A DNA stretch of 49,935 nt, filler included, from Bipalium vagum (lineage: Eukaryota), in the NCBI GenBank assembly GCA_037834085.1. It is 2 parts of 2 records of this genome, joined end to end, with 100 filler letters (N's around TTAATTAATTAA, not from the genome) between each part and the next. Parts side by side here need not be neighbours in the genome. Positions count along the whole stretch, not along the records: positions 1 to 19,707 come from JBBMKC010269578.1; 1 more part is not named here. One strand, 5' to 3'. The translations under genes and the position numbers were made by a program. Below, piece after piece: positions 13,646 through 15,029 of this stretch. The notes beneath the pieces were generated by a model that saw only the letters and a list, made by a program, of their open reading frames with translations, searched no databases and was not told the DNA's origin. Each line of letters starts with the position of its first letter. The stretch's first letter is position 1.

Positions 13646-15029
13646 TTCGTCAATACTGTCACAATTGCAATGGTGTTCTAGTAAAAATTGAACTATGTTA
13701 ATATTCCCATGGAGACAGGCAATATTAATGGGTCTCCAACTATCCTAATAACAAATCAATCAATTGAATTAAACTTATTCTCATTACCTGTACCAAACAA
13801 TCAATGTCGCAATTTTTGTCAAATAAAACCTTAACAATATCAATATGACCATGTTTTGCAGCAAAATGAATTGGTCGCCAATTTTTCTGTATTCAGTATT
13901 ATGAGTTATAAATAGATATAAATAAATCAGACTTTGTCACAAGCTTCAATGTTACAACTCTTTTCAATCAAGAATTTGACAATTTCAATATTACCACTTT
14001 CTACAGCAAAATGAATGGGTCTTCTATCATTCTAACTTCATAGTAAAAAATTATTTAAAGAAAATAACTCAATTACTTCTCCACAAGCTTCAATATCACA
14101 ATCGTTTTCCACGAAGAACTTCACAAGTTCAATATAACCACTTTCTATAGCAGAGTGAATTGGTCTTCTATTAAGCTGAAATATTTTTTAGAAATTTAAT
14201 CAAAATCACTCCATTACTCTGTCACAAGCATTAAGGTCACAACCCTTTTCAACGAAGAACTTTACAAGTTCAATGTTACCAAGTTGCAAAGCAAAATGAA
14301 TTGGTCTTCTATTAAGCTGAAATAATATATAGAAATATAATCAAAATCATTCAATTACTCTATCACAAGCTTCGATGTCACAACCCTTTTCAACGCAGAA
14401 CTTTACAAGTTCAATACAACCACTTTCTATGGTTGAGTGAATTGGTCTTCTGTTAAACTGAAATCATTAGTTATTTTTGAATTATTATGAGAAAATTAAT
14501 TACTTCGTCCCTGGCTTCAATATTACAACCATTCTCAATTAAGAACTTGACAATCTCAATATTACCTCTTCTTGCAGCATGGTGAATGGGACTGTGTTTA
14601 AACTGAAAAAATTTTTTCAAATTATTTGACAATAAATCATTTACTTTATCATAAGCTTCAATGTCGCAGCCCCTCTTAACCAAAAGCTTTACAATTTCAA
14701 TGTAACCACATTTTACAGCCAAGTGAATAGGTCTACAATTGAGCTGGAATTATTAATAGTTATTTATTAAGAATAACTAAATTACTTCGTCAAAAGCTTC
14801 AATGTCACAACCATTCTCAATCAAGAAATTAACAATATCAATATGACCATTCTCACATGAAAGATGAATTGGTCTTTTATTTTCCTATGCATATAATCTT
14901 CAGTTATTCAAGTTAATGTCAAAAAATCACCTTTCCACATATTTCTAAATTAAGTGGATTATTAGCCAAAGTCTTTACTGTTTCGATGTAACCATTTTGA
15001 CAGGCAACATAGATTAGATGGTCAGTGTT
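13646..15029 (-). CDS. ankyrin-repeat protein: ten 99-nt exons, one ankyrin repeat each (start and true 3' end not resolved)
   Basis: Exons 15029-14931, 14884-14786, 14743-14645, 14602-14504, 14457-14359, 14316-14218, 14175-14077, 14031-13933, 13886-13788 and 13744-13646. All are phase 0, with GT-AG introns of 42-46 nt and no stops. Consensus xxRPIHxAxxxGxIEIVKFLIExGCDIEAxD. Confidence 0.93.

What the first reader, a model, noticed from the sequence alone, without database searches (positions are those of the whole stretch)
13646..15029. Natural 'DARPin-library'-like cassette array: ten symmetric 99-nt exons, each one ankyrin repeat, variable at binding positions
Seen: ten exons of exactly 33 codons, all phase 0-0, separated by 42-46-nt introns, with no stop in 330 codons. 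The framework (RPIH…G.IE.VKF..E.GC.IEA.D) is near-constant, while helix-1 and turn residues vary strongly (LSCEN, LAVKC, HAARR, STIES, FALQL, SAIES, FAVES, FAAKH, IACLH; turn ENK, LNC, FKH, FNR, NDR, KNW, DSW). Established: these are the ankyrin target-contact positions randomised in DARPins; repeat-per-exon layouts exist in ankyrins, and exon-shuffled repeat receptors are proposed for brown algal LRR/TPR genes. Inference: any exon can be skipped, duplicated or swapped without a frameshift, so this may be a diversifying recognition (immune/sensor) module in a multigene family.
Basis: partly seen in the sequence, partly recalled or inferred. Interest (0 to 1): 0.75.

Follow-up and report, generated by a model that had tools for sequence, protein, structure and literature searches.

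The report
Ankyrin exon array of kinase gene
The ten 99-base exons are real and form the ankyrin-repeat half of one, probably recently broken, copy of a flatworm-type gene family that joins long ankyrin arrays to a protein kinase; the variable surface positions look relaxed, not positively selected.

Summary

The array is the N-terminal half of a 15-exon gene (15029-8555). It runs cap repeat, nine ANK repeats, a 70-nt linker exon, then four exons of an STE-type (MAP3K5/ASK1-like) kinase.

The genome is 440 Mb and AT-rich, probably a triclad flatworm. It holds about 35 such genes, with arrays of 8-40 one-repeat exons.

Arrays grow by tandem duplication of the ~144-nt exon+intron unit. The terminal repeats stay positionally orthologous between paralogues.

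The six most variable codons are the positions I recall as randomised in DARPins. This is the generic ANK pattern. Their dN/dS is 0.67 (CI 0.57-0.81) against 0.31 for the framework, so none is significantly above 1.

The window copy has a 2-nt frameshift in kinase exon 1, which independent contigs reproduce. It also has no Met codon in the array and ALE in place of APE. It is probably a young pseudogene.

No RNA data exist, so exon skipping is untested.

The parts
14931..15029 (-). Exon 1: divergent N-terminal cap ankyrin repeat (99 nt, phase 0-0). An in-frame TAG lies directly upstream at the acceptor.
   Evidence: It is positionally orthologous to exon 1 of 7 of 8 paralogous arrays. Pfam gives only a weak hit (Ank_2 E=0.064).
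13933..14884 (-). Exons 2-8: seven internal ANK repeats of 99 nt each (14884-14786, 14743-14645, 14602-14504, 14457-14359, 14316-14218, 14175-14077, 14031-13933), separated by introns of 42-46 nt.
   Evidence: Exons 5-7 are 79-83% identical to each other and have homologous introns. Exons 3-8 have no positional orthologues in other arrays; exon 2 matches exon 2 in 2 of 8 arrays.
13646..13886 (-). Exons 9 and 10 (13886-13788, 13744-13646): conserved C-terminal ANK repeats (C-cap-like).
   Evidence: Exon 10's best match is the last exon in 8 of 8 arrays, and exon 9's is the penultimate exon in 6 of 8.
10822..13645 (-). A 2.8-kb intron between ANK exon 10 and the linker exon. It carries transposon debris (about 13306-12550) and a very high-copy repeat (about 11100-11500).
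   Evidence: In paralogues the linker open stretch lies 78-2705 nt after the array end (offsets used).
10752..10821 (-). Linker exon, 70 nt, phase 0 to 1. It is family-specific and has no Pfam match.
   Evidence: The TTTCAG|...|GTAA boundaries align in 10 of 10 loci. Pfam gave 0 families.
10108..10362 (-). Kinase exon 1 (Gly-loop GEGGYG and the catalytic-lysine strand). It has a 2-nt deletion near 10290 relative to four paralogues, which is a frameshift followed by TGA.
   Evidence: A Logan contig covers 9635-10766 with 0 differences and 0 gaps.
9614..9740 (-). Kinase exon 2 (alpha-E to HRDIK), ending in phase 1.
   Evidence: Pkinase 34.5 bits, above the 31.7 cut-off..
8953..9216 (-). Kinase exon 3 (completes the HRDIK-P-ENIL loop, then DFG, an activation-segment insert and ALE in place of APE).
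   Evidence: Pkinase 52.4 bits. The paralogues have APE. Nearest solved chains are MEK1 and STK24/25.
8555..8748 (-). Kinase exon 4 (C-lobe) with the TGA stop at 8557-8555.
   Evidence: Closest solved chains are MAP3K5/ASK1, E about 8e-4..

Best explanation
The ten exons encode the ankyrin-repeat domain of one member of a lineage-specific multigene family of cytoplasmic ANK-array kinases. The array has an N-cap repeat, seven internal repeats and two conserved C-terminal repeats. The gene continues on the minus strand through a 70-nt linker exon into a four-exon STE-group (MAP3K5/ASK1-like) kinase domain.

Shown: the family architecture, about 35 paralogues, 8-40 one-repeat exons per array, and introns of about 45 nt. 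Also shown: the duplicating unit is the ~144-nt exon+intron, often copied in blocks of 2 or 7 units, while the end repeats stay positionally orthologous.

Shown: framework codons are under purifying selection (omega about 0.3). The six beta-turn/helix-1 surface codons are only relaxed (omega about 0.7). So the 'library-like' pattern is the ordinary signature of ANK repeats.

Inferred: the ANK array is a protein-binding regulatory or scaffold arm that brings partners to the kinase or gates it. Repeat-number change between paralogues retunes what is bound.

The window copy itself is probably a recently disabled paralogue. It has a frameshift in kinase exon 1, no Met codon in the array, and APE changed to ALE.
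For: Exon structure.

One gene: a cap exon, linker exon and kinase exons are conserved downstream of 7 or more paralogous arrays. The linker splice sites align in 10 of 10 loci, and the phases 0->1->... fit.

Kinase identity: Pkinase hits for the kinase exons. The nearest solved chains are MAP3K5/ASK1 for the last exon and MEK1/STK24-25 for the DFG exon.

Family size: 944 first-look ANK-exon candidates, with all 150 scored matching at E<=4.2e-5. There are 36 kinase-exon matches including self among 98 scored, and 17 arrays of 8-40 exons in the loci fetched.

Unit duplication: intron identity tracks third-codon identity (0.83 against 0.85 at about 90% exon identity; random intron pairs 0.65). 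The nearest relative lies in the same array for 145 of 323 exons, against 6.8% expected, with peaks at distances of 2 and 7 units. The terminal exons are positionally orthologous.

Selection: 133 disjoint pairs give pooled omega 0.38, surface-6 0.67 (CI 0.57-0.81) and other-27 0.31.

Window copy: a 2-nt deletion against 4 of 4 paralogues, reproduced by Logan contigs. There is no M in any of the 10 exons, while the equivalent cap position is M in 5 of the 7 caps found. It still shows omega 0.23-0.36 against its closest paralogue, so the break is young.
Against: There is no RNA evidence at all. Splicing, the 5' end and expression are all inferred.

The dN/dS estimate is a simple Nei-Gojobori count on pairs in an AT-rich genome, not a codon-model site test. 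Position 33 has omega 1.0-1.45 (CI 0.74-2.12), so weak positive selection at single sites is not excluded.

The frameshift is seen only in one sample's reads. The window assembly and the Logan contigs may derive from the same data. An ANK-only truncated product remains possible.

All ten ANK exons and their splice sites are intact, which is mildly odd for a pseudogene.

The function of the ANK arm is inference from what ANK domains do elsewhere. Family counts are lower bounds from a fragmented assembly that may include haplotigs.
Confidence: 0.75

Rival explanations
1. One reading: the array is a diversifying recognition (immune or sensor) module. Symmetric cassette exons would be skipped, duplicated or swapped to generate many binding specificities, with positive selection on the contact residues.
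For: All exons are phase 0-0 and of equal length. The family is large and repeat number varies 8-40. The six highest-entropy columns are the surface positions. Position 33 has omega about 1-1.45. The arrays are coupled to a signalling kinase, as sensors often are. Within-array duplication is frequent.
Against: Pooled surface omega is 0.67, with the CI below 1. No codon is significantly above 1. The variable-position pattern is generic to ANK repeats (PMC4308713 passages). The terminal repeats are stably orthologous, so there is no free shuffling. No unit-number variant appeared at this locus in the one run. There is no RNA to show skipping. No signal-peptide or membrane exon is conserved upstream of the cap. 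This copy is frameshifted.
Confidence: 0.12
2. The window copy is functional. Either the 2-nt deletion is a sequencing or consensus error or a minor allele, or the gene now makes an ANK-only protein (about 353 codons, then an early stop) from a start codon in an undetected upstream exon.
For: All ten ANK exons are open with canonical splice sites. Omega is 0.23-0.36 against the closest paralogue. One other paralogue (L044) also lacks the cap Met, so an upstream start exon may exist.
Against: The deletion is present in independently built contigs at depth about 19, with no alternative listed. All 4 paralogues compared keep the frame. APE is ALE only in this copy. No upstream exon is conserved in more than 2 loci.
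Confidence: 0.25
3. Assembly artefact: a collapsed or chimeric tandem repeat that only mimics a regular exon array.
For: The assembly is very fragmented (272,664 contigs), and tandem repeats are hard to assemble.
Against: The units are only 45-83% identical, so each is unique. Logan contigs cover 13318-15100 in three pieces with 0 differences. The same architecture recurs on many contigs.
Confidence: 0.03

Closest known systems
Canonical ankyrins (human ANK1/2/3, C. elegans unc-44); the gene structure is recalled, not from a call
   Same: They have long arrays of 33-residue ANK repeats, many encoded one (99 bp) or two per symmetric exon. The repeats act as a protein-binding solenoid.
   Different: Ankyrins carry ZU5/UPA/death domains, not a kinase. 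Their repeat number is fixed at 24, their introns are large, and there are few gene copies. Here there are 10-40 repeats, introns of about 45 nt, about 35 paralogues and a C-terminal STE-type kinase.
ANK-plus-kinase proteins: ILK, TNNI3K, ANKK1/RIPK4, DAPK1 (architectures recalled)
   Same: They combine an ankyrin-repeat interaction domain and a protein-kinase domain in one cytoplasmic polypeptide. In ILK and TNNI3K the ANK repeats are N-terminal, as here.
   Different: Those kinases are TKL or CAMK group, with at most about 10 repeats and single genes. Here the kinase exons are nearest to STE-group chains (MAP3K5, MEK1, STK24/25). The kinase exon has no close relative among 1.84 billion representatives (best E 2.5e-10).
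MAP3K5/ASK1
   Same: It gives the best solved-structure match to the last kinase exon, with the GKPP(F/Y)Y...PDP C-lobe segment aligned.
   Different: The match is weak (E about 8e-4 over 59 residues). ASK1's regulatory arm is not an ANK array (recalled). Orthology was not tested.
DARPins (designed ankyrin repeat proteins)
   Same: Both have an N-cap, internal repeats and C-cap layout. The six highest-entropy family columns (exon positions 1, 3, 11, 12, 31, 33) map to the DARPin positions I recall as randomised (2, 3, 5, 13, 14, 33). A related library design chose positions 2, 3, 5, 10, 13 (+33) from the entropy of natural repeats (PMC4308713 passages).
   Different: DARPin diversity is synthetic and unconstrained. 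Here the same positions evolve at omega about 0.7, which means relaxed but not diversifying. The resemblance is circular, because the designers copied nature's variable positions.
Fungal NLRs with highly similar ANK/TPR/WD repeats (seen only as search listings, PMC13449251 and PMC12258605)
   Same: Both are multigene families in which repeat units are gained and lost, attached to a signalling domain.
   Different: Fungal NLRs have a NACHT or NB-ARC domain rather than a kinase. As I recall (not from the listings), they also show positive selection on repeat surface residues. That was tested here and not met.
Schistosome micro-exon genes (recalled)
   Same: This is another flatworm case of strings of symmetric exons that could be skipped without a frameshift.
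   Different: MEG exons are 6-81 nt and encode secreted, unstructured proteins, with documented splice variation. Here the exons are complete folded repeats of a cytoplasmic kinase, and no RNA data exist.

Membership tests
Ankyrin repeat (Pfam Ank / Ank_2-5) | A 33-residue repeat matching the Ank profiles above the curated cut-off | tested here: met
   7 of 10 exons exceed a curated cut-off individually (exons 2, 3, 4, 6, 8, 9, 10). Exon 7 is exactly at it (Ank_3 22.3). Exons 1 and 5 are below. The family consensus keeps the recalled TPLH-like motif and G.(I/L)..V..L.
Eukaryotic protein kinase (Pfam PF00069) | Profile match plus the catalytic motifs (Gly-loop, beta3 Lys, HRD, DFG, APE) | tested here: inconclusive
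   Exons 2 and 3 of the kinase exceed the cut-off (34.5 and 52.4 bits against 31.7). GEGGYG, FVVKK, HRDIK and DFG are present. However, APE is ALE and exon 1 is frameshifted in the window copy. The paralogues meet all features compared.
STE group / MAP3K (ASK-like) | Closest similarity to STE-group kinases across the domain, and orthology by phylogeny | tested here: inconclusive
   Best PDB matches are MAP3K5 for the last exon (E about 8e-4) and MEK1/STK24-25 for the DFG exon (E about 4e-8 to 2e-5). No kinase tree was built. The joined domain was not searched, by operator rule.
Diversifying repeat receptors (library-like, under positive selection) | dN/dS above 1 at ligand-contact codons | tested here: not met
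   Surface-6 omega is 0.67 (CI 0.57-0.81) on 133 pairs and 0.72 (0.54-0.96) on 64 young pairs. Position 33 alone is 1.0-1.45, with the CI including 1.
Diversifying repeat receptors (library-like, under positive selection) | Multigene family with variable repeat number | tested here: met
   about 35 kinase-linked loci and arrays of 8-40 exons.
Cassette-exon alternative splicing systems | Transcript isoforms that skip or repeat cassette exons | not testable with these tools
   No RNA run holds the locus. The only run is DNA-type contigs.
Processed or unitary pseudogene (window copy) | A disabling lesion confirmed independently | tested here: met
   A 2-nt deletion against 4 of 4 paralogues gives TGA two codons later. 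It is reproduced with 0 differences by a Logan contig. The caveat is that the underlying reads may be the same.

The most novel reading that the evidence does not exclude
This lineage has built a private repertoire of about 35 cytoplasmic 'ANK-array sensor kinases'. Each is a 10-40-repeat binding solenoid wired directly to a MAP3K-like kinase. The one-repeat-per-exon design with ~45-nt introns would let repeat number change quickly by unequal crossing-over, and possibly lets splicing skip cassettes. That would give a kinase-coupled, NLR-like innate recognition or stress-sensing system not described in animals.
Probability: 0.12. Interest if true: 0.7.

Novelty: new variant of a known kind. Interest (0 to 1): 0.4.

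Why it matters
The finding replaces an attractive 'natural DARPin library' idea with a testable, more ordinary account. A lineage-specific ANK-kinase family grows by tandem duplication of exon+intron units, and its variable surface reflects relaxed constraint rather than selection for diversity.

The family is still worth noting. The kinase exon has no close relative among 1.84 billion representative proteins. The gene build is unusually regular, with about a thousand 99-nt exons and ~45-nt introns. It is a clean natural system for studying how repeat proteins gain and lose units, and how minimal introns are recognised.

If RNA data showed cassette skipping or infection-responsive expression, the family would become a candidate invertebrate sensor repertoire.

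Tried and rejected
Earlier scan findings were not open.

RNA evidence: the look-up of sequencing runs listed no RNA holder. Exon skipping and expression therefore stayed untested.

The protein atlas gave only 'protein kinase' clusters. The representative-library search with the DFG exon gave only generic multi-kinase proteins from unrelated taxa (pseudoscorpion, fungi, crinoid, oomycete), so no named relatives were found.

Literature: searches for a planarian or flatworm ANK-kinase expansion found nothing relevant. These were ankyrin plus kinase/kinome terms; planarian plus kinome; I saw only listings and abstract starts, plus ankyrin passages of PMC13400776. Searches for exon-per-repeat ANK genes gave general repeat-evolution papers. 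I read passages of PMC1553488, one passage of PMC7314423, and only a reference-list hit in PMC4687027. The claim that ANK1-type genes have 99-bp repeat exons therefore rests on recall. Supplements were not consulted.

Joints in read laying that skip 637-737 nt within the array have short sides (26-40 nt) and foreign letters between them. I read them as paralogue contigs, not as deletion alleles.

A mariner identity for the debris at 13306-12550 has only a weak HTH_48 hit (E=0.011, below cut-off). Three other pieces tried and five more gave nothing.

I rejected 'the cap exon extends upstream' because an in-frame stop lies within a few codons upstream in all 7 caps found.

I did not build, search or fold a joined spliced protein, by operator rule. 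So there is no structure prediction and no whole-domain kinase classification.

The family statistics therefore rest on 473 distinct exons or 323 exons in 17 arrays, out of at least 944 candidates.

Full report
OBSERVATION.

On the minus strand the window holds ten consecutive AG|99 nt|GT exons: 15029-14931, 14884-14786, 14743-14645, 14602-14504, 14457-14359, 14316-14218, 14175-14077, 14031-13933, 13886-13788 and 13744-13646. None has a stop, and the introns are 46, 42, 42, 46, 42, 42, 45, 46 and 43 nt.

A scan of 12000-16500 for the same pattern found only these ten. TRF sees a 141-nt period.

Exon-by-exon Pfam scans give Ank-family hits. Seven of the ten exons are above a curated cut-off, one is exactly at it, and exon 5 and the cap-like exon 1 are below.

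THE WHOLE GENE.

Open stretches downstream on the same strand include protein-kinase pieces. These match Pkinase.

I compared the flanks of paralogous arrays from the same genome. A cap exon directly upstream is conserved in 6-7 other loci. Downstream, a family-specific linker exon and kinase exon 1 are each conserved in 7-9 other loci, including the window.

The linker exon (10821-10752, 70 nt) has aligned TTTCAG|...|GTAA boundaries in 10 of 10 loci. It takes phase 0 to phase 1, which is the phase in which kinase exon 1 (10362-10108) starts. Kinase exons 2-4 are 9740-9614, 9216-8953 and 8748-8555, with TGA at 8557-8555.

The array is therefore the N-terminal half of a 15-exon ANK-kinase gene. 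The 2.8-kb intron after exon 10 holds transposon debris (weak HTH_48 hit, E=0.011) and a very high-copy repeat.

The kinase exons are nearest to STE-group chains: MAP3K5/ASK1 for the last exon (E about 8e-4) and MEK1 and STK24/25 for the DFG exon.

THE FAMILY AND THE HOST.

The window is contig C269578 of a 440.8-Mb assembly in 272,664 contigs.

One ANK exon used as a query gave 944 first-look candidates. All 150 that were scored matched.

On the loci fetched, arrays of consecutive 99-nt exons at about 144-nt spacing are the rule. There are 17 arrays of 8 or more exons, with sizes from 8 to 40.

The family-specific DFG exon has 36 matches including self at E<=1e-8, out of 98 scored. This suggests about 35 genes, and 35 genes of about 27 repeats each fits the roughly 944 exons. 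One 34.5-kb contig carries two members in convergent orientation.

The DFG exon has no close relative among 1.84 billion representative proteins. The best hit is E 2.5e-10, and the top hits are generic multi-kinase proteins of unrelated taxa.

A mitochondrial-type HSP70 from the same genome is 88% identical to a Dugesia japonica entry. Other named animals on the list are mostly about 80-83% identical. The genome is therefore probably a triclad flatworm, which fits its 20-36% GC and tiny introns.

HOW THE ARRAYS EVOLVE.

Across the family, the 394 introns measured are almost all 38-56 nt long (one is 32 nt; median 45). Their GC is 0.21 against 0.38 for the exons. If retained, 262 of 394 would give an in-frame stop, and only 35% of units are multiples of three.

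Intron identity follows third-codon identity. At about 90% exon identity it is 0.83 against 0.85, and random intron pairs score 0.65. So exon and intron duplicate together as DNA.

For 145 of 323 exons the nearest relative lies in the same array, against 6.8% expected by chance. The distances peak at 2 and 7 units, which points to block duplications. This agrees with what passages of PMC1553488 report for ANK repeats.

The end repeats behave differently. Window exon 1 matches exon 1 in 7 of 8 arrays, exon 10 matches the last exon in 8 of 8, and exon 9 matches the penultimate exon in 6 of 8. Exons 3-8 have no positional partners. The closest paralogue aligns at 74% with exons 2-10 against its last nine units.

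Arrays thus have stable caps and a fluid interior.

IS IT 'LIBRARY-LIKE'?

Over 473 distinct family exons, the six highest-entropy columns are exon positions 1, 33, 3, 11, 12 and 31. I map these to DARPin positions 3, 2, 5, 13, 14 and 33. The set of randomised DARPin positions is recalled, not taken from a call.

Designers chose such positions because they are the high-entropy beta-turn and helix-1 positions of natural repeats (PMC4308713 passages; PMC8683736 passages). The match is therefore expected for any ANK family.

On 133 disjoint close exon pairs (80-99% identical) the pooled dN/dS is 0.38, and no codon is significantly above 1.

- The six surface codons give 0.67 (bootstrap CI 0.57-0.81).
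- The other 27 codons give 0.31 (CI 0.28-0.36).
- On the 64 youngest pairs the values are 0.72 (0.54-0.96) and 0.32.
- Position 33 alone is 1.0-1.45, with a CI that includes 1.

This is relaxed constraint on the binding face, not demonstrable diversifying selection. The method is a crude count, and site models remain to be run.

THE WINDOW COPY.

Against four of four paralogues, kinase exon 1 lacks 2 nt near 10290. This shifts the frame between the Gly-loop and the lysine strand and gives TGA two codons later.

A Logan contig of run X1 covers 9635-10766 with no difference or gap. Three further contigs cover 13318-15100 identically, and no clean unit-number variant appears. The caveat is that X1 may be the sample the window came from.

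The copy also has ALE where the paralogues have APE. It has no Met codon in any of its ten ANK exons. At the equivalent position of the cap exon, five of the seven caps found carry a Met, and all seven have in-frame stops just upstream. I infer, without evidence, that this Met may be the start behind a cis- or trans-splice acceptor.

Against its closest paralogue the window copy still shows omega 0.23 for the terminal ANK exons and 0.36 for kinase exons 1-2. I read it as a young pseudogene (about 65%). The alternatives are an ANK-only product or an unrecognised error.

MECHANISM AND VERDICT.

Shown: the gene architecture, the family size, the duplication unit, the cap conservation, the selection regime, and the lesion in this copy.

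Inferred: the ANK solenoid is a cytoplasmic protein-binding arm that recruits partners to, or gates, an STE-type kinase. No signal or membrane exon is conserved upstream. Repeat gain and loss between paralogues would retune binding.

Not tested: transcription, exon skipping, and any immune role (no RNA).

Its core claim of diversification is not supported.

I found no paper describing such a family. I rate it a new variant of known kinds (ANK-plus-kinase proteins and exon-per-repeat ANK genes), of moderate interest.

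Noticed in passing
window 12550-13306 (-): Frame-shifted transposase-like debris sits inside the 2.8-kb intron after ANK exon 10. One piece gives a weak HTH_48 (Mos1 transposase) hit, E=0.011, below the cut-off. The other pieces gave nothing. Word depth in run X1 is raised here (228-908 against about 50-120 nearby).
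   Followed up: partly
window 11100-11500: An extremely high-copy repeat. The summed word depth of X1 contigs is 18,000-37,000, against tens to a few hundred in most other bins, with many partial joints. Its identity is unknown.
   Followed up: no
window 16600-19700 (+): Decayed LTR-retrotransposon-like pol pieces, with weak RVT_1 (E=0.043, 17363-17593) and RT_RNaseH (E=0.001, 17861-18085) hits. They lie upstream of the ANK gene, on the opposite strand.
   Followed up: partly
window 1-91, 9970-10027, 19373-19454: Trinucleotide AT-rich microsatellites, (TAT)n and (ATA)n. The one at 9970-10027 lies in the intron between kinase exons 1 and 2. Paralogues show similar runs after kinase exon 1.
   Followed up: no
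G000:C216135 (L032-L035): Two family members lie convergently on one 34.5-kb contig. One has its array at 4734-11236 (+) with the kinase exon at 13851-14156. The other has its array at about 33300-30200 (-) with the kinase exon at 25319-25627. This points to local clustering of the family.
   Followed up: partly
17 arrays in L031-L050 and the window: When an exon's nearest relative lies in its own array, the distance peaks at 2 units (34 cases) and 7 units (28 cases), not at 1 unit (12 cases). This suggests block duplications of 2 and 7 repeats.
   Followed up: partly
window 2499-3044 (-): A 182-codon open frame with no convincing family (DUF7222, E=0.077). It is unexplained and may be another gene's exon or chance.
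   Followed up: no
G000:C39170:1159-3025 (-) and 4924-6790 (+): Two HSP70 matches with identical scores lie head to head on one contig. This is an inverted pair of hsp70 genes, each with one TAA inside the match (possibly an intron).
   Followed up: no
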